Shown: piece by piece, positions 35,582 through 52,898 of the stretch
How positions within the stretch are numbered: position 1 is the stretch's first letter
Layout: every line of letters starts with the position of its first letter
Origin: Mytilus californianus
Lineage: Eukaryota
Assembly (NCBI RefSeq): GCF_021869535.1
Contig: NW_026262723.1
Span: forward strand, 22,258,001-22,322,000
Direction of reading: 5' to 3'
Length of the DNA: 64,000 nt
The notes under the pieces: model-generated
What the model was told of the DNA's origin: nothing
What the model saw: only the letters and a program-made list of their open reading frames with translations
Database searches by the model: none
Translations under genes and position numbers: made by a program

Positions 35582-38500
35582 CTATGATGTCATAGTGAAT
35601 CCACTACTGGATGTTGATGTCTTGTCTTGCAATGATTCTGTGTGGTTTGCTGAAGAGAGCTGGTCAGCTACTTGACAATAATGTTTGTTCCTAATGTGCT
35701 CAACTAAGGCATTAGTATTGGCACATTCCTCGTGACAGAGCACACACTGGATGTTACTTATTGGAAAAGGTAACTTCTGGTTCATTGCGGATTGGCTAAC
35801 AGGTAAAATGGCTGAAAATAGCAAAAATTTCATTAATTTTGGTTTTTTTCCCCTCTTTTTGAACTGTTGTTGACAATTCAGGAGGTCAGAGGGTTAACAA
35901 AAATCAATTTTGTCATCACATGGTTTATTTTTTTAAGGTGGTACCTAACACTACAGGGAGATAACTCTGTAAAAATCAGCTAAACGTTTTAATTACCTTG
36001 TATTGTTAAGGAGATATTAAGCTTCTCTATGATCAAAGAAAGTGTTAGTCAAACTGCTATATACATGTAACCAATGAAATTTTTCTGAGAAAGTGGTTGG
36101 TTCAAATTTTTTGAAATTTTCATATTTTTGTCAAAGGGTCAAAGTAAACATTTTGTCAAAATTTTATGAAAATTAAACAAGCCGAATTAATATTAGTCGA
36201 GGTGTTGGGTACCACCTTAATTCAACTTTTTAAACAAACACTAGTACTGTTATCTGAAACATACACATATATTTTGACCTAATATTTGAATCACACATAC
36301 AAATGTATATCACTCATAAATAATTGCAACAAATGAAATGTAAAAAACAACAATAAAATACATGTACAATAAATACATGAAAATGTTAACTAAAACTTTG
36401 ACTTCTACTCTCTATTCAATACATAACCAGACATATGTATGTGCATTTGTGTTTATAGAGAGTGAAGGAAGCAACATATCAATTAAATCATTTAGTAAAA
36501 CAACTATTAAATTTTGCATTGGTAAATGTACATGTATATGCTTTTTTATATATAAATTTGCAGATAAAATTTGACAATTACGAACCCTGATAAGGTCAAT
36601 ACAAAATAAAATATTTTGTGTATAGTTTTTATAAATGAAATTGTGAAGAAAAGAAAATTTCGCACAATGAAGATTATTTTTTTCAATTGCAGTCATTTCA
36701 ATTTCACTGGCCATATAAGTATTTTCAAATTCAATTGGTCATGAGCATTCCTAATGAAAGTGAAATCAGAGAAGTGCTGGGGCAGCTGCAAACTGTAGTA
36801 CAATGTATGTTTCATTATATCCACAATTTTCTTCAATCAAAAATATGAGTCGTTCATTTTGTTGATATGCTTGATTTTGTCAGGTTTTATGAACCCCCCC
36901 CCCCCCTTTTTGAATTTACCTTGAAGTTCTGTATTTTTGTTAATTTACCTTGAAGTTATGTATTTTTGTTAATTTACCTTGAAGTTCTGTATTTTTGTTA
37001 ATTTACCTTGAAGTTATGTATTTTTGTTAATTTACCTTGAAGTTATGTTTTTTTGTTAATTTACCTTGAAGTTATGTATTTTTGTTAATTTACCTTGAAT
37101 TTCTGTATTTTTGTTAATACTTTTATATTAATAATAATACCTGGAATAAACCTTTTATCATCTTCACTGGTATGTGGTTCAGTTTTGATGGGGACACTGT
37201 ACTGGAGTCTGATTCCATCTTCTTTTTTCACTGCTTCATCATAAGTAGGTAATTTAGCTGTAGCACCATCTTCAGTTTTAATCTCACTGACCATATTATC
37301 TCCCACAGACTGTTGTTCTTCATGTGACCGTGTGTTGTTTTCTATGGCAGCAGCATATTCTAGTAAATTACTGACTGCTGTTGATGATTCTAAGGCCCCA
37401 GCTTCTAATGCAGCCTTTTCTGCGTCATTTTTACGTTGGACGTTAAAAACACTGAAATCCTCAGCATTAGTAGACTTTGCCTCACCCTCTTTTTTAATAG
37501 TTTCAGTTTCAGATCTCGGTTGTACATTGAAGATATTGAAGCAGTCATAGGCAGACTGGCTTCCATCCCCACTGAGTGTTTCTTTCTCCCCTTCCTGTCC
37601 CTCATTCTGAGCCTCAATAACTTTGTTAACGTATGGAATGCCTGAAAGACAGTATGTGGTTTGATCTCCTGGTACTGTATACAAATATTGCACGTTAGAA
37701 CTACCTCCTGCTTGTTCAGACACACTACTTAAATGTATGTCTAACATGTTAGCATTATCAACAAGCCAGGCCGAAGCAGATTGTGCAAATTCTGGTGGAA
37801 TCTGAACACCATTTTCTCCTTGTAACAATTTGGCTATCTGTTGATAGGACAGATCTTTTGGTTCAATGGCAGGTTGCTGGTAAGATTGTTCAACAGATGT
37901 GTTCGGAACTTGGTAGGACTGTTCACTTGTCGTACTTGGTACATGATGGTATGCTTGTTGTGAAAGCTGACTGTTTAAAATGGGGTATGTCTGTTTAGTT
38001 GATGGTTCTATTTTGATGGTTTCCGTAGTAACAACTTGATGATGAGGATGATTAACAATTGTCTGCTCAGTCGGTCTTGCAGTTAAAACTACAAAATACA
38101 TAAATAGAATCTAGACATGTATTGGATTTTAAATTTGACAAAGATAAGATTGAGTCAGCCTCATTTTTTTTATTCATCTCTGTTCATGTATAGTATGTAC
38201 AACTTCATTTCAAAATTCATCTTAACTTCCCCAAAAAGCAACAATTATGCAACTGAAACTTAAAAAAACCTTTATAGATTACCAAAAATCAGTAATGCTA
38301 GCAATGAACTTTTGCTACATTGAGTCCCTAAAATAAATAATATTGCCATGTTTCAAAATAGTTACAGTCCTTAAAAAATAAATAACTAAAAATAAGATTT
38401 TTGAATAATAGGCAGGGCTCACTCTACTTCAGAATGATAGGGTGGTGGGACTTCTCTTTTTGAAACTGATAGGGAGAAGTGGTGAGACTTAAAAGACAAG

Positions 38501-41500
38501 TGTTTGTTCGCTCGTGGCGCTATAATGTTTTTACAATAATTATTTTATAAAAAAGAAAATACAATTAAAGTAACATTTGTCTCAGTTTATGTCTTAAATT
38601 GTCATTTATAGTTACATAATTATATTTTGTCTACGATTTATTTAACAAATAACAAACATATGTTACTACAGATTTAGAAAATTTAAGGAATAAAGAGTAG
38701 ATAACTCATGAAAGTATCTGTAATAACACATGCAAGATATTTTCTCTAATAACCCTATAGAGTTATATTCCTGACTGAAAATGGGATGGAAGGAAAGACG
38801 GATGGTCAAGGGTAAGACTTAATGCTTCCGTCGTCTATGGCGGGGGCAAAATAAAAGAAAATAAGAGAAGAATGTGTCTGACGACATGAATGCTCTCGCT
38901 CAAGCTTTGCAACAAAAATTGGTCGGATGGAGAGACGAAAGGACGTATAGATGGAAGGTCAAGGGTAACACTTAATGCCCCCGTCACCTACGGCGAGGGC
39001 ATATAAATTATACTTCATCAATTAAAGTTCAATGAGGAAAACTATTCTGTTTATGAAACTCATTGTTTTTCATTAAAAAGATATTTTATTTAGGGGTATA
39101 TCTTTGTCAATATCTTGTTCCTGGTTGTGTCATTGGCAATCTTACCACCTGATAAACTGATATACTGTTGACAAAAAATTCTAAATTACTTGGGCTCCTT
39201 TCACAAAGAATCTTGAGACTAAAATGGATCTGGAGTTATACTGAAATGTTAATGAGAACTTCCAACTTTGTCTGTTCAAAATGGGGGTTTACATACAACT
39301 TCAATAAAACATGTGTAAATAAATAATTATACAGTGCTAGGTTTCAAAACTAAAGGTTGATTTATGTAGAAACTGAGGGTACATAATATGGGATTTAGCA
39401 ATCAACATCTTAAATTCTGTCACAAACCATACCTTTCATATCATGATTATTTTTTACTTTTGATTTGCTTAAAAGTTCAATTTCTTGGCAATGCATGTGT
39501 AATAATAACTTTTTTTTTACCTTACAGAACACTGCTGCTTGGTTTTCAATTTACCTTTTGCATTAGGCTTTTTCTTTTCTGCTTCCACACTTTTACTTCT
39601 GCTCTTTTTCTTATCTCGATCTCTACCTTCAGCATTTTTACACCATGCTTGGTTTCTATGTTGACTGAAAGAGCCAGAATGGGCAAATCGTTTTCCACAC
39701 CATTCACAATGGTAAGGTTTTTCACCAGTATGTAGTCTTTCATGTTCAGTACGATGATGTTTGTGTTTGAATGCCTTACCACAGGTACTGCAGGCAAACT
39801 TTCTGTCAACTGTAAATGTAAGTATTGTATAAGTACTTCAGGTAAACATTTTGCCAACTGTAAATGTAAGTATTGTATAAGCACTGCAGGCAAACTTTCT
39901 GTCAACTGTAAATTATGTAAGTTTTGTATAAGTACTGCAGGCAAACTTTCTGTCAACTGTAAATGTAAGTATTGTATAAGTACTGCAGGCAAACTTTCTG
40001 TCAATTGTAAATGTAAGTATTGTATAAGTACTTCAGGAAAACTTTTTGCCAACTGTAAATGTTAGTATTGTATAAGTACTTCAGGAAAACTGTTTGCCAA
40101 CTGCAAATGTAACTATTGTATAAATACTGTAGGAAAACTTTCTGTCAACTGTAAATGTCAAATATTACTGTATATAGCCCTGATCCTTTAGAATCCCAAT
40201 TACTGTATATAGCCCTGATCCTTTAGAATTCCCTATTACTGTATATAGCCCTGATCCTTTGGAATTCCCAATTACTGTATAGCCCTGATCTTTTAGAATT
40301 CCCTATTACTGTATATAGCCCTGATCCTTTAGAATTCCCTATTACTGTATATAGCCCTGATCCTTTAGAATTCCCTATTACTGTATATATATAGCCCTGA
40401 TCCTTTAGAATTCCCTATTACTGTATATAGCCCTGATCCTTTAGAATTCCCTATTACTGTATATAGCCCTGATCCTTTAGAATTCCCTATTACTGTATAT
40501 AGCCCTGATCCTTTAGAATTCCCTATTACTGTATATAGCCTTGATCCTTTAGAACTCCTTATTACTGTATATAGCCATGATCCTTTAGAATTCCCTATTA
40601 CTGTATATAGCAGAGATCCTTTAGAATTCCTTATTACTGTTTATAGCCCTGATCCTTTAGAATTCCCTATTACTGTATATAGCCCTGATCCTTTAGAACT
40701 CCCTATTACTGTATACAGCCCTGATCCTTTAGAATTCCCTATTACTGTATATAGCCCTGATCCTTTAGAATTCCCTATTACTGTATATAGCCCAGATCCT
40801 TTAGAACTCCCTATTACTGTATGTATACAGCCCTGATCCTTTGGAATTCCCTATTACTGTATATAGCCCTGATCCTTTAGAATTCTCTATTACTGCATAT
40901 AGCCCTGATCCTTTAGAACTCCTTATTACTGTATATAGCCCTGATCCTTTAGAATTCCCTAGTACTGTACATAGCCCTGATCCTTTAGAACTCCTTATTA
41001 CTGTATATAGCCCTGATCCTTTAGAATTCCCTATTACTGTATATAGCCCTGATCCCTAGAATTCCCTATTAGTGTATATAGCCCTGATCCTTTGGTATTC
41101 CCTATTACTGTATATAGCCCTGATCCTTTAGAATTCACAATTACTGTACATAGCCCTGATCCTTTAGAATTCCCTATTACTGTATATAGCCCTGATCATT
41201 TAGAATTCCCTATTACTGTATATATATAGCCCTGATCCTTTAGAATTCCCTATTACTGTATATAGCCCTGATCCTTTAGAATTCCCTATTACTGTATATA
41301 GCCCTGATCCTTTAGAATTCTCAATTACTGTATATAGCCCTGATCCTTTAGAATTCCCTATTACTGTATATAGCCCTGATCCTTTGGAATTCCCTTTTAC
41401 TGTATATAGCCCTGATCCTTTAGAATTCCCTATTACTGTATATAGCCCTGATCTTTTAGAATTCCCTATTACTGTATATAGCCCTGATCCTTTAGAATTC

Positions 41501-41897
41501 CCTATTACTGTATATAGCCCTGATCCTTTAGAACTCCCTATTACTGTATATAGCCCTGATCCTTTAGAACTCCCTATTACTGTATATAGCCCTGATCCTT
41601 TAGAATTCCCTATTACTGTATATAGCCCTGATCCCTAGAATTCCCTATTAGTGTATATAGCCCTGATCCTTTTAAATTTCCTATTACTGTATATAGCCCT
41701 GATCCTCTGAAATTCATGACCACTAGTATTCTTCCTGTCAATCTAAAACCATTCAAAAACTTTCCAGGGAAAACACAGAAAACTGAGTGTATTTATATAT
41801 ATGTTCTCTTCCTTAAGTACTTACTAATATCTTCTTTACTGCTTTTTCTCCTTTTCACCACTCTTTGCAAGCTCTGGACTTGCACTTCTTGTTCCAT
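35582..41897 (-). CDS. ZEB/Zfh1-related zinc-finger protein lacking a homeodomain (501 aa)
   Basis: Exons (minus): 41897-41825 ([24 protein letters not shown], in-frame TAA upstream of the ATG), 39809-39555 ([56 protein letters not shown]), 38088-37141 (Q/S/E-rich, contains PKDLS), 35811-35582 (C2H2 [25 protein letters not shown]). All phase-1 GT-AG introns; total 1506 nt. Confidence 0.88.
35937..36216. mobile_element. Kolobok-type MITE in ZEB-like intron 3
   Basis: TIRs ggtggtacctaacac / gtgttgggtaccacc, flanked by TTAA on both sides (35933-35936, 36217-36220). Confidence 0.8.
36912..37117. repeat. 29-bp tandem array (7 copies) derived from the retroelement 3' tail
   Basis: Unit aatttaccttgaagttctgtatttttgtt at exact 29-nt spacing; similar to the tail at 7441-7480 and, inverted, at 575-605. 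Confidence 0.93.
38862..39006 (+). mobile_element. Miniature internally deleted HINE-like element (a second 3' end lies at ~38780-38848)
   Basis: subTIR atgctctcgc vs gcgagggcat; 3' ggtcaagggtaacacttaatgcccc..hairpin, repeated just upstream. Confidence 0.55.
39787..40158 (-). repeat. 48-bp tandem array (8 copies) made of the ZEB-like exon-2 splice acceptor
   Basis: Minus-strand unit cttatacaatacttacatttacag|TTGACAGAAAGTTTGCCTGCAGTA; the copy nearest the exon is the real acceptor and exon start. Confidence 0.96.
40165..41712. repeat. 36-bp minisatellite (~43 copies) filling ZEB-like intron 1
   Basis: Unit ttactgtatatagccctgatcctttagaattcccta; source of the periodic [12 protein letters not shown] ORFs. 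Confidence 0.98.
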
Positions 41898-44249: not shown

Positions 44250-45060
44250 GATCTTTATAGTCTTATTTCAAGTGGGTACCAGTTTAGGCCTTCCCCATGT
44301 TAGTAACTAAGCTGGTGTTATGGAACTTGCTGTTGCTTGTGTATATATAGGTTTTCGTTTTTTGTTGCTCTCAGAATATTCCATTTATCAGGGTGAAAAT
44401 GCATGAGCCAGAACCGCTCCCATCTGTTGGCCGCTTCTAAATCCGACTGTAATTTATGAGTGCCGTTCGTTTTTTTTTTTCGTTTGTAAATAATGCTATC
44501 GTCTGCAAATAATCGCAGTGTGCTATGTTTTATATATTCTGACAAACCTTTGATATAAACAGAAAATAAGATAGGTTCCAGTACTGTGCCTTGAGGTACT
44601 CCGGATGTTACAAGAATATTGTTATTTGATGTTTCGAGATCTCCTTCAAGGACTTCTATTTTACTTCTACTCTGCTTCTTAAAAATTTTTGAACCCAGTG
44701 TAATGCATTACGATTTATACCATATAAGCCGGTTTTATACATGAGGCAAGGGTGTAAAACTTTGTCATATGCTTTTGCAAAATTCAGAATTTTGATGTCA
44801 TTTTGGATGTTTTTATTATTTGAATTTGCAAGGTCTTGAATGAATGATATTAATTGTGTTTCACAGGAACGGGATGACCGACACCCATGTTGGAAGTCAT
44901 GTCGAACTTTATTTTAGGTATTTTCATAATATTGAAACTACAACGGTTGTTTCATTTGTATGTTAAAATGATATGGGCAAGAGTTTATTTGATCGTATTT
45001 GTCGCCTTTTTTAATGCTGGACATACATGTCTTGCACTCTTTTAAAATTTTGACATGTAT
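44250..45060 (-). mobile_element. Degraded CR1/L2-type LINE reverse transcriptase fragment
   Basis: Minus-strand motifs in order: KKGD, FQHGCRSSRSCETQL, NFAKAYDKV, VTSGVPQGTVLEPILFSVYIK, LRLFADDSIIY, WLMHFHPDK; frameshifts and stops present. Confidence 0.9.
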
Positions 45061-51084: not shown

Positions 51085-51924
51085 TTAAGCACATTTCTTC
51101 ACGTGACCATTTAACTGCGTTTGGTTGGTGGAATCACTGAACTCAAAATCCTTTCGTATAAATAGTTGTGTCGTCTTTTTATATGTCCAGTAAGGTGTCA
51201 ACACAAAAGTAAGCAACAACGCATATGTACAACTAAGTAGATACACTGGTACTGTTAACTCGGAGAGCAGATCATTTCGGTATTTGAAAAATACGTAATA
51301 GCAAAATGTGATTTCTATAAAAGATCGAAAATGGTAAACGTGTACTAATAAACATTGGTTTAGTTTCCATATAGTCGTGTTTCCTTTCCCAAATTTCAGT
51401 AATATCCAGCATGTAAAGGTAAAAGGCGCACTCAATTCCAAAAGTAACAACCTCGCAGCGAAAAAGTGGCCAACGTTATGTAAAACTAGTTGTAACAAAA
51501 TAAGCAAACCTATCCAATGATGGATTTGTAATAGGAAACTAAACTTTCTATTACTGATGTCAGAAAATGTTAAAACAGTACATTCAAAAACAAAAAACCC
51601 AAGAGCTGAGATAACTATGATAAAACTGGTCGGTGTTGTTTCGTACATTACGTTTTCTTGGAGTTCTTTATCGACAAATAAACACCGTAAACAGACCCCT
51701 ACACAGACTATTGTATAGCACGAACGAACAAATCCTGAATTCCAAAATATTTGTTCCTTTTTCGATAGATTGACGTACGTTGTTGATGATGTCGAAAATA
51801 GTCCAGAAATAACAAAACCGATGGCGTATGTAACAAAGAAGACGACAACAAGTAGAAGTTTTGATGACTGTTGGCTATAATCTATATCTTCTAAAGCAGA
51901 AAGGATGTAACGTATCCATCCCAT
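51085..51924 (-). CDS. CLN8: Protein CLN8-like, TLC (TRAM/LAG1/CLN8) domain ER membrane protein, 279 aa
   Basis: Uninterrupted ORF with motifs colinear with vertebrate CLN8: DYS, TYVNL..KEQIFW, GFFVFE, IHH, GH, LLLELSAPFT, WILLKFG, WKLNQ, PYWTYKKTTQL and C-terminal KKCA (KKxx ER retrieval). Acceptor ttttcag sits 12 nt before the ATG (exon starts 51936). Confidence 0.93.
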   Translation of the reverse strand: MGWIRYILSALEDIDYSQQSSKLLLVVVFFVTYAIGFVISGLFSTSSTTYVNLSKKEQIFWNSGFVRSCYTIVCVGVCLRCLFVDKELQENVMYETTPTSFIIVISALGFFVFECTVLTFSDISNRKFSFLLQIHHWIGLLILLQLVLHNVGHFFAARLLLLELSAPFTFTCWILLKFGKGNTTIWKLNQCLLVHVYHFRSFIEITFCYYVFFKYRNDLLSELTVPVYLLSCTYALLLTFVLTPYWTYKKTTQLFIRKDFEFSDSTNQTQLNGHVKKCA

Positions 51925-52898
51925 GGTGATTTGATCCTGAAAATAATAACAAAAAAATAATAGAAAAAAAAAAAAAAAAACAGGTCCAGGATTACAAATA
52001 ATGATAAAATGGACTACAACAACAATTGATAACTTGAGCTGATTTAGAAAATAAAAAGATTAAACTGTTTTGAGAAAATTTAATTTAAAGTAGAAAGAAG
52101 AATATTCACGAAGGGTCAATACCGACACTAAAATTCGATGAAAGTTATCAAAAACATTTACTGAAAGTAGCTGCATGGCAAATACATAATCAATAACCTT
52201 TGTCATCTTCCATCAGTAATTTCATTATAATAACGTGTACACTCTTATGATGAAAAAATCATATCTATGACCTAGCTACACTAGGAACTAATTTTTTAGG
52301 ACGATTTCATGTGCTTTCTACACTAATGTACATCTATTTTGAAAAAAAAAAAATCATTTAATAATATTTCTGCAAAGAAAAGAGACTAATGCCTAATTTT
52401 CTCCGATTTTCATTTCAAGCTTAACATAATGCAGTTTTATTCAAAATTTGATAAAAATCTGTGACATGACCCGTTTATTGTAATTTGACCTCTAGATGCG
52501 AGCACTAATCCAAATATATAACTGTCAAAGAAAAGTAAAAATGTCTTCACTCCGCTTTTTCCAATTTGTTTAAATGGCTATCCAATTTGCTGACCGATTT
52601 ATTCAAGTAAATGAATGCTTTACATTTGTTTTGAGCCTTTTTGGACATTGATTGGACATTTCTTTTTATAGACATCATTGTCAATCAAAAAGAAAACATT
52701 ATAAAATATAATAAAACGTTTTTATATGTACTCCTATTTGTATGGTTTATCTTCAACTGAATGTTCTTAAAATACTATAATTATTTTTTTCGAGCGTACA
52801 ACACGTATTTTTGGAAAATTTCCTATAACAATAAAAGTGATTGTAAGAATAATGCAAATACTGATAAATAAAAACTTATAAACCTAGATTTAACTCAC

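What the first reader, a model, noticed from the sequence alone, without database searches (positions are those of the whole stretch)
35582..41897. 'Mini-ZEB': one ZEB/Zfh1 finger pair plus a CtBP motif, no homeodomain or second cluster
Seen: a complete 4-exon, 501-aa ORF. Its exon-2 fingers carry the ZEB helix residues (KHKHH..EH and HSGS.SQH at positions -1, 2, 3, 6). PKDLS sits at 37861-37847, basic NLS-like runs (VKRRK, DKKKSR) are present, and one unrelated C2H2 finger lies near the C-terminus. Established: ZEB/Zfh1/ZAG-1 have two separated finger clusters around a homeodomain, bind bipartite CACCT(G) sites and repress via PxDLS-CtBP. Inference: a short paralogue that could bind single E-boxes and recruit CtBP, or compete with full-length ZEB. 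No further ZEB exons were seen between 41.9 kb and CLN8, and a stop precedes the ATG in frame.
Basis: partly seen in the sequence, partly recalled or inferred. Interest (0 to 1): 0.8.

Follow-up and report, generated by a model that had tools for sequence, protein, structure and literature searches.

The report
Mussel-only protein with borrowed ZEB fingers
This is a real, expressed and conserved gene, found so far only in mussels, that borrowed the last two DNA-binding zinc fingers of the ZEB/Zfh1 regulator and attached them to an otherwise unique, disordered protein; the proposed CtBP docking motif occurs in this species only.

Summary
A 4-exon, 501-aa gene lies on the minus strand (ATG 41897, stop 35582; all introns GT-AG, phase 1). 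Its protein is identical to RefSeq XP_052071950.1 (Mytilus californianus LOC127710226). RNA contigs show all three splice junctions.

Orthologues of 501-528 aa occur in five Mytilus species and in three more distant transcriptomes. Each of those three transcripts has an in-frame stop ahead of the ATG. dN/dS against M. coruscus is 0.08.

The two exon-2 fingers are of the ZEB C-terminal-cluster type:
- They are 64-75% identical to ZEB/Zfh1 fingers and carry the same residues at the DNA-contact positions.
- They sit on the C-type side of a 100/99 split in the tree.
- The exon starts at the phase-1 intron position found before CZF2 in a bryozoan ZEB gene, so the module equals ZEB's last coding exon.

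Bivalve SMARCE1/BAF57 proteins carry the same module.

The rest of the protein matches nothing outside its own family among 1.84 billion representative proteins, and is predicted to be disordered.

The CtBP reading fails. PKDLS occurs only in M. californianus (AKDLS or TKDLS in other Mytilus; no P in the three distant orthologues), whereas most true ZEBs checked keep PLDLS/T.

Verdict: interpretation partly supported. This is a new variant of a known kind, of moderate interest. Automated annotation already calls it "ZEB2" or "uncharacterized", and it has not been studied.

The parts
41825..41897 (-). Coding part of exon 1 (24 codons plus 1 base; Met, then the invariant VKRRK basic run at 41844-41858). 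The 5'UTR runs collinearly to at least 42006.
   Evidence: donor TTA|gtaagt, phase 1. The X3 contig overhang at 39809 equals 41825-41854. The M. coruscus transcript L007 aligns to 42006-41825.
40163..41706 (.). 36-bp satellite (about 43 copies) that fills most of intron 1.
39785..40166 (-). 48-bp minisatellite (about 8 units) that repeats the 3' splice site and the first bases of exon 2. Only the last unit is the real acceptor.
   Evidence: RNA contigs use the acceptor at 39809. Unit count differs between species: 7 in M. californianus, 10 in M. coruscus, 2 in M. trossulus.
39555..39809 (-). Exon 2, a symmetric phase 1-1 exon of 255 nt. It holds the ZEB C-type finger pair (finger 1 at 39730-39792, finger 2 at 39640-39708, the latter a C2HC form with H-x5-C spacing) and a basic tail (DKKKSR at 39598-39615).
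   Evidence: (Pfam zf-C2H2 29.1 bits against a cut-off of 25.2).
37141..38088 (-). Exon 3 (948 nt). It encodes a family-specific region predicted to be disordered, with invariant short motifs. Conserved psi-K-x-E sites lie at 38006-38017 and 37178-37189. The species-specific PKDLS lies at 37847-37861.
   Evidence: (joints).
35582..35811 (-). Exon 4, coding part including the stop codon. It holds the invariant lone C-terminal C2H2 finger at 35681-35746. The 3'UTR runs to at least 35456.
   Evidence: (joint 35811 to 37141).
51085..51936 (-). Upstream neighbour on the same strand: the coding exon of a CLN8/TLC-domain gene (acceptor before 51936, ATG 51924, 279 aa). It is not part of the zinc-finger gene, but one RNA contig joins it to the exon 2 donor.
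   Evidence: PF03798. The same gene order is seen in M. trossulus.

Best explanation
LOC127710226 of Mytilus californianus is a functional gene known so far only from mussels (Mytilus and three unnamed relatives).

Origin (shown for the fingers, inferred for the event): the last coding exon of a ZEB/Zfh1-type gene, which encodes C-terminal-cluster fingers 2 and 3 behind a phase-1 intron in the finger 1/finger 2 linker, was copied. It became an internal phase 1-1 exon of a new protein.

Build of the protein:
- a short N-terminus with an invariant KRRK run, likely a nuclear import signal;
- the two ZEB-type fingers;
- a basic tail;
- about 330 residues of conserved but disordered sequence, with short invariant motifs and two conserved psi-K-x-E (SUMO-consensus) sites;
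- one invariant atypical C2H2 finger near the C-terminus.

Likely mechanism (inferred): the residues at the contact positions of both fingers are those of ZEB (H, H, H, E and H, G, S, Q at positions -1, 2, 3, 6). The protein would therefore read one CACCT(G)-type half-site with one 'hand'. At such sites it would either occupy them in competition with two-handed ZEB, Snail or bHLH factors, or bring in partners through its family-specific motifs.

CtBP docking is not part of the conserved mechanism.
For: Shown here:
- Gene model and splicing, and identity to the RefSeq protein.
- Complete ORFs of the same build in five Mytilus species and three distant transcriptomes, each transcript with a stop ahead of the ATG.
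- Purifying selection: dN/dS 0.08 at dS 0.10 against M. coruscus, and 0.07-0.26 in each of the three regions.
- Fingers are 64-75% identical to ZEB/Zfh1/ZAG-1 fingers.
- Residues at the contact positions are the same as in ZEB C-type pairs.
- The tree separates N-type from C-type pairs at 100/99 support. The family is a 100/100 clade on the C-type side.
- The Watersipora ZEB gene has a phase-1 intron at HSG|ERPFPC. This is the same place and phase as here (I|DRKFAC) and in M. coruscus SMARCE1-ZF (S|PRRYPC).
- A profile of the non-finger part found only this family among 1.84 billion representatives.
- AlphaFold2 folds only residues about 26-85 with confidence.
- psi-K-x-E sites at about residues 134 and 410 are conserved in all orthologues.

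From the literature: ZEB binds CACCT(G) through its finger clusters and binds CtBP at PLDLS repeats (PMC8304685).
Against: - No DNA-binding data exist for this protein.
- Finger 1 has Arg at the usual hydrophobic core position 4 (KHKHH-R-TEH, where the ZEB pairs compared here have L or M), invariant in the family.
- Finger 2 has lost the His that ZEB has three residues after the first His, so it must use Cys81 as its fourth zinc ligand. Either change could alter stability or specificity.
- CZF1 is missing, and two fingers alone may bind weakly.
- The effector side is unknown: no known co-repressor motif is conserved.
- The taxa of the three distant orthologues are not named, so 'mussel-restricted' rests on similarity and on the absence of hits elsewhere.
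- I could not show a canonical Zeb gene in Mytilus; one search listed only insect proteins.
Confidence: 0.6

Rival explanations
1. One reading: a mini-ZEB repressor that recruits CtBP through PKDLS.
For: PKDLS is present at 37861-37847. PxDLS is the CtBP-binding consensus, and ZEB uses PLDLS repeats (PMC8304685). The flanking xKDLS is conserved within Mytilus.
Against: The proline is found only in M. californianus: A in M. coruscus, T in M. edulis, M. galloprovincialis and M. trossulus, and no P in the three distant orthologues. No other P-x-[DNS]-L-[STV] occurs in any family member. Lys at position 2 is atypical. Most true ZEBs checked keep PLDLS or PLDLT. At most this is a recent gain in one species.
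Confidence: 0.08
2. The fingers no longer read DNA like ZEB. They, or the lone C-terminal finger, serve RNA or protein binding, or read a different DNA site.
For: Family-invariant changes at structural positions: L-to-R at core position 4 of finger 1, and H-to-Q with an H-x5-C ligand arrangement in finger 2. The C-terminal finger matches only zf-C2H2_2 and JAZ-type models, and weakly. Most of the protein is disordered.
Against: All eight residues at the contact positions are the same as in ZEB and invariant across the family. AlphaFold2 folds the pair as canonical fingers with pLDDT about 80. The linker TGEKP is intact, and basic flanks are conserved.
Confidence: 0.2
3. It is an exon set or isoform of a longer ZEB gene, or a decaying partial duplicate (pseudogene).
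For: Only part of a ZEB is present. Automated pipelines named the orthologues 'ZEB2' or 'zinc finger homeobox protein 1/2'.
Against: Full-length transcripts in four other taxa have stops ahead of the ATG, and stop codons and 3'UTRs. There are no further finger or homeodomain exons in the 64 kb. dN/dS is 0.08. All splice junctions are confirmed in RNA. The one aberrant joint goes to CLN8 out of frame, not to ZEB exons.
Confidence: 0.03
4. On origin: the module was copied from the bivalve SMARCE1-ZF gene, or the reverse, rather than directly from Zeb.
For: The two share H-x5-C spacing of the last ligand, a lack of CZF1, a basic run before the pair, a phase 1-1 internal exon and the same acceptor position.
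Against: The tree leaves the C-type pairs as a polytomy and does not join the two groups. The intron position is also that of a ZEB gene, so it does not discriminate. No mollusc Zeb C-cluster was available for comparison.
Confidence: 0.3

Closest known systems
[quoted passage not shown]
   Same: The last two C-terminal-cluster fingers are shared: the [16 protein letters not shown] and HSGS.SQH signatures, 64-75% identity, and the same residues at positions -1, 2, 3 and 6. The phase-1 intron before the pair is at the same place.
   Different: It has no N-terminal cluster, no CZF1 and no homeodomain. It has no conserved PLDLS CtBP motif and no RRKQxxP NuRD motif. About 400 residues are family-specific, and there is an extra lone finger. 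The module is an internal exon here, not the terminal one.
Bivalve SMARCE1/BAF57-like proteins with a C-terminal ZEB-type finger pair (for example M. coruscus 'SMARCE1', C. virginica LOC111103115, Pinctada imbricata)
   Same: Both carry the same C-type pair without CZF1, with H-x5-C spacing. In both, the pair is encoded by one phase 1-1 exon that starts 5 codons before the first Cys. The pairs are 60-63% identical by BLASTP.
   Different: Those proteins carry an HMG box and a coiled coil and are BAF57 orthologues. Nothing outside the fingers is shared.
Amphibian 'ZEB1-like / zag-1-like' proteins without a homeodomain (600-700 aa)
   Same: They are ZEB-derived proteins that lack the homeodomain.
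   Different: All eight checked keep fingers in both the N- and C-terminal regions and a PLDLS motif; four show the RRKQ N-terminus. They are therefore still two-handed, CtBP-type ZEB paralogues.

Membership tests
ZEB/Zfh1/ZAG-1 | N-terminal zinc-finger cluster (KFKHH / SSH..SKKC-type pair) | tested here: not met
   There are only three fingers in the protein and in the 64-kb window, and none is N-type.
ZEB/Zfh1/ZAG-1 | C-terminal zinc-finger cluster (three fingers; the last two carry KHKHH..EH and HSGS.SQH) | tested here: inconclusive
   The last two fingers are present and of C-type. The first finger of the cluster is absent.
ZEB/Zfh1/ZAG-1 | Central homeodomain | tested here: not met
   No Pfam homeodomain in any exon. 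No WFxNxR signature in any frame of the window. Precomputed Pfam for all orthologues lists fingers only.
ZEB/Zfh1/ZAG-1 | Conserved CtBP-interaction motif(s), PLDLS or PLDLT | tested here: not met
   PKDLS occurs only in M. californianus and is absent from all other family members. 8 of the 12 true ZEBs checked have PLDLS/T.
ZEB/Zfh1/ZAG-1 | N-terminal NuRD-interaction motif, RRKQxxP | tested here: not met
   The family has VKRRKSSK, without Q or P. Bryozoan, beetle and several frog ZEBs have RRKQxxP.
ZEB/Zfh1/ZAG-1 | Binding to CACCT(G) E-box-like sites | not testable with these tools
   The residues at the contact positions are the same as in ZEB. There is no binding assay, and no ZEB finger structure appeared among the 60 best PDB matches shown.
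C2H2 zinc-finger proteins (Pfam PF00096 / PF13465) | Match to zf-C2H2 above the curated cut-off | tested here: met
   PF00096 scores 29.1 bits against a cut-off of 25.2. PF13465 scores 38.8 against 40.
SMARCE1/BAF57 with ZEB fingers (bivalves) | HMG box and coiled coil ahead of the finger pair | tested here: not met
   No HMG match. BLASTP similarity to P0086 and P0077 is confined to the fingers.

The most novel reading that the evidence does not exclude
In bivalves the terminal ZEB exon (fingers CZF2-3) became a portable 'E-box reader' cassette that was captured at least twice. One capture was by the BAF57/SMARCE1 subunit of the SWI/SNF remodeller, which would give that complex its own sequence-specific targeting. 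The other was by a mussel-only orphan protein, which would act as a one-handed antagonist or modulator of ZEB, Snail or bHLH factors at CACCT(G) sites through partners still unknown.
Probability: 0.25. Interest if true: 0.6.

Novelty: new variant of a known kind. Interest (0 to 1): 0.4.

Why it matters
ZEB factors are the textbook two-handed E-box repressors of epithelial-mesenchymal transition, and their build is very stable across animals. This case is clean and backed by transcripts. Only the core finger pair, exactly one exon, was re-used in a new protein and then kept under strong purifying selection in a group of mussels. The same cassette sits on the bivalve BAF57 orthologue.

That gives a natural experiment on what a single ZEB 'hand' can do, and an example of exon-level domain shuffling in a transcription-factor family. 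It also corrects the database names 'ZEB2' and 'zinc finger homeobox protein 1/2' for a protein that has no homeobox. It is not a new kind of system, and no function has been shown.

Tried and rejected
1. The third word-index search, with Rhodnius zfh1 as query, was meant to find a full-length Mytilus Zeb. Only the 8000 candidates sharing the most words were scored, and the 120 listed were all from insects. It gives no information on molluscs.
2. Paper searches for mollusc or bivalve ZEB found nothing on this gene. Only Paps et al. 2015 lists an oyster Zeb homeobox.
3. ESM Atlas look-alikes of residues 105-501 gave only generic zinc-finger clusters with few shared features, so they were not used.
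4. AlphaFold2 on a 9-sequence alignment gave mean pLDDT 33, with only the fingers confident. No fold search was worth running on the rest.
5. The PDB sequence search returned only generic C2H2 structures among the 60 best shown, and no ZEB fingers.
6. The short (263-274 aa) members of the 90% cluster were considered as possible isoforms. They are exon-3 ORF calls running into intron 3 on genomic contigs, so they were rejected.
7. The two M. trossulus loci were considered as a tandem duplication that could explain the exon 2 to CLN8 joint. They lie 10 Mb apart and are 94-98% collinear over most of the 25 kb, including CLN8. That fits a segmental duplicate or an uncollapsed haplotype, not a tandem pair.
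9. An exact look-up of C. virginica SMARCE1-like P0077 found no gene on record.

Read laying was given 4371 letters that avoid the long intron-1 satellite.
Full report
**1. What is there**

On the minus strand a four-exon gene runs from the ATG at 41897 to the stop at 35582-35584.
- The exons are 41897-41825, 39809-39555, 38088-37141 and 35811-35582.
- Every intron is GT-AG and phase 1. The CDS is 1506 nt, giving 501 aa.
- A TAA lies five codons upstream of the ATG, in frame.
- The window has no N.

A six-frame scan of all 64 kb found only this gene's three C2H2 fingers, plus two spurious matches. It found no homeodomain WFxNxR signature.

**2. It is a real, annotated, expressed gene of Mytilus californianus**

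A search with exon 3 found a 506-aa M. trossulus protein (92% identity) and three complete 505-528-aa proteins on transcript-like Logan contigs of 1.8-2.1 kb (55-60% identity).

The 90% cluster holds the orthologues of M. californianus, M. coruscus, M. edulis, M. galloprovincialis and M. trossulus.
- My spliced model is letter-for-letter XP_052071950.1, 'uncharacterized protein LOC127710226 [Mytilus californianus]'.
- The gene spans 6316 nt on JAKFGE010000007.1, with a TLC/CLN8-domain gene upstream.
- Other pipelines named the orthologues 'ZEB2' or 'zinc finger homeobox protein 1/2'.

RNA evidence in organism A:
- Contigs of X1, X2 and X3 join 35811 to 37141. Contigs of X1 and X2 join 38088 to 39555. 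Both joints read CT..AC, which is GT-AG on the minus strand.
- The X3 contig that ends at 39809 continues with 30 letters that are exactly 41825-41854. All three junctions are therefore confirmed.
- Stranded raw reads (X22) cover the exons thinly, with the first mate on + only. That fits a minus-strand RNA.

Orthologue transcripts:
- The M. coruscus transcript L007 maps onto the window as 42006-41825, 39809-39555, 38088-37141 and 35811-35456, and has an in-frame stop in its 5'UTR.
- The three distant transcripts also have stops ahead of the ATG.

No transcript links these exons to homeodomain or N-cluster exons.

**3. Selection and range**
- dN/dS against M. coruscus is 0.08 at an unsaturated dS of 0.10. 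It is 0.07-0.26 in each of the three regions: N-terminus with fingers, middle, and C-terminus.
- A profile of the non-finger part (alignment A1) was searched with HMMER against 1.84 billion representative proteins. It found only this family and four exon-sized fragments of it.
- Pfam finds nothing in exon 3.
- AlphaFold2 folds only residues about 26-85 with confidence (pLDDT about 80). The rest scores below 50.
- Even so, the middle region has many invariant columns in short blocks. Two psi-K-x-E sites, at about residues 134 and 410, are conserved in all orthologues.

The gene therefore looks restricted to mussels (Mytilus and three unnamed, deeply diverged relatives), and it is under constraint along its whole length.

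**4. The fingers are ZEB fingers, specifically C-terminal-cluster fingers 2 and 3**

In the region search, ZEB/Zfh1/ZAG-1 proteins of flatworms, rotifers, bryozoans, insects, fish and frogs match at 64-75% identity. Generic poly-ZNF proteins match at about 45%.

In the 71 ZEB-like pairs extracted:
- N-cluster pairs read K[FY]KHH..EH.RIH and HSGSYSSH..SKKC.
- C-cluster pairs read KHKHH..EH.RLH and HSGS[YF]SQH.

The mussel family has the C-type signature.

A maximum-likelihood tree of 55 distinct pairs splits N-type from C-type at 100/99 support. It puts the mussel family, itself a 100/100 clade on a long stem, on the C-type side. That side is otherwise an unresolved polytomy.

Family-specific departures:
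- Arg stands at core position 4 of finger 1, where the ZEB pairs have Leu or Met.
- Ala replaces Ser before the HSGS of finger 2.
- Gln replaces the His that follows the first His of finger 2. This leaves Cys81, at H-x5-C spacing, as the fourth ligand. Trp80 and Cys81 are invariant.

**5. Origin of the module**

In the bryozoan Watersipora the ZEB gene has a phase-1 intron in the Gly codon of the CZF1-CZF2 linker (HSG|ERPFPC). Its last coding exon therefore encodes exactly CZF2, CZF3 and the tail.

Exon 2 here starts at the same place and in the same phase (I|DRKFAC).

Bivalve SMARCE1/BAF57 orthologues carry the same C-type pair at their C-terminus. These include C. gigas, C. virginica, Pinctada and M. 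coruscus.
- In M. coruscus the fusion is seen on a single transcript contig, L005.
- There the pair is one phase 1-1 exon that starts at S|PRRYPC, again the same position.

The simplest reading is that the ZEB terminal exon was copied and turned into an internal symmetric exon at least once in the bivalve lineage. I cannot tell whether the mussel gene took it from Zeb directly or from SMARCE1-ZF. The two share H-x5-C spacing and the loss of CZF1. However, the tree does not join them, and I had no mollusc Zeb C-cluster to compare.

**6. The CtBP idea**

PKDLS is present in M. californianus only.
- M. coruscus has AKDLS.
- M. edulis, M. galloprovincialis and M. trossulus have TKDLS.
- The distant orthologues have NKDQLS, AKEMT and TKDMS.
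- No other P-x-[DNS]-L-[STV] occurs in any family member.

Of the 12 true ZEBs I checked, 8 keep PLDLS or PLDLT. The two bryozoan ZEBs, the Tribolium one and four of the frog ZEB1-like proteins also have an N-terminal RRKQxxP. ZEB2 binds CtBP at repeated PLDLS sites (PMC8304685).

So the motif here is a recent single substitution next to a conserved KDLS. It is not part of the conserved function. The family's KRRK run lacks the Q and P of the NuRD motif.

**7. Most likely mechanism**

Shown:
- It is a conserved protein whose only confidently folded part is a ZEB-type finger pair. The pair is flanked by basic runs, one of them an invariant N-terminal KRRK run that looks like a nuclear import signal (nuclear localisation was not tested).

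Inferred:
- It reads one CACCT(G)-type site with one hand, because the residues at the contact positions are unchanged. It acts by occupying such sites or through partners of its own motifs.
- SUMO-consensus sites are typical of repressors, and ZEB2 itself is modified by Pc2 (PMC8304685).

From my own knowledge, not checked here:
- The last two fingers of each ZEB cluster are the ones needed for DNA binding.

My rough odds:

| Claim | Odds |
|---|---|
| Real functional gene | above 0.95 |
| Fingers are ZEB-derived | about 0.9 |
| Restricted to mussels | about 0.8 |
| Binds CACCT(G)-like sites | about 0.6 |
| Acts mainly as a competitor or repressor | about 0.3 |

**8. Comparison and novelty**

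It fails membership of the ZEB family. It has no N-cluster, no CZF1, no homeodomain, and no conserved CtBP or NuRD motif. It does work with ZEB's own reading head.

The frog ZEB1-like proteins without a homeodomain are still two-handed and keep PLDLS, so they are not a precedent.

The gene is in the databases under automated names, but I found no study of it. I class it as a new variant of a known kind, of moderate interest.

**9. An unexplained side observation**

The X3 contig that carries exon 1 and exon 2 (depth 26.5) does not continue into exon 3. It continues into letters identical to 51906-51935. These are the first bases of the CLN8-like coding exon, behind its acceptor.
- CLN8 lies upstream on the same strand, so a downstream donor is joined to an upstream acceptor at exact splice sites.
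- The reading frame is out of frame with CLN8 and stops after about 20 codons.
- Possible causes are a tandem structural variant in that animal, trans-splicing, or back-splicing of a read-through RNA.
- This rests on one contig in one run, and I had no second read-laying run.

Noticed in passing
window 39555 joined to 51936 (CLN8-like exon 51085-51936, minus strand): One RNA contig of run X3 (687 nt, depth 26.5) joins the exon 2 donor of the zinc-finger gene to the acceptor of the upstream CLN8-like coding exon, at exact splice sites. The order is the reverse of the genome order and is out of frame with CLN8. It could be a tandem structural variant, trans-splicing or a back-splice.
   Followed up: partly
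L004:26657-26845 and L005 (M. coruscus SMARCE1); proteins P0073-P0086: Bivalve SMARCE1/BAF57 orthologues (HMG box plus coiled coil) end in a ZEB C-type finger pair encoded by one phase 1-1 exon. The fusion is seen on a single transcript contig. A SWI/SNF subunit with its own E-box-type fingers may be worth a study of its own.
   Followed up: partly
window 39785-40166: A 48-bp minisatellite repeats the 3' splice site and the start of exon 2 about eight times. RNA contigs use only the last acceptor, at 39809. The nearest upstream copy would bring an in-frame TGA. Unit number differs between species: 7 in M. californianus, 10 in M. coruscus, 2 in M. trossulus.
   Followed up: partly
window 40163-41706 and 36913-37118: A 36-bp satellite (about 43 copies) fills intron 1. 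A 29-bp tandem array (7 copies) starts just after the exon 3 donor, in intron 3.
   Followed up: no
window 35930-36225 (intron 3): This stretch has very high depth in all RNA runs (thousands in contig depth, about 200 in raw reads), with many variants and loose ends on both sides. It looks like a highly repeated, transcribed element such as a SINE or MITE, not part of this gene.
   Followed up: no
window 44318-44545 (minus strand): A 75-aa ORF with a reverse-transcriptase-like FADD motif, probably a fragment of a retroelement lying between the zinc-finger gene and CLN8.
   Followed up: no
L008 and L009 (M. trossulus CM071708.1 at 25.53 Mb and 15.68 Mb): M. trossulus has two copies of the whole CLN8 plus zinc-finger locus, 10 Mb apart on one chromosome. 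They are 94-98% identical and collinear over most of 25 kb, introns included. This is a segmental duplication or an uncollapsed haplotype in the assembly.
   Followed up: partly
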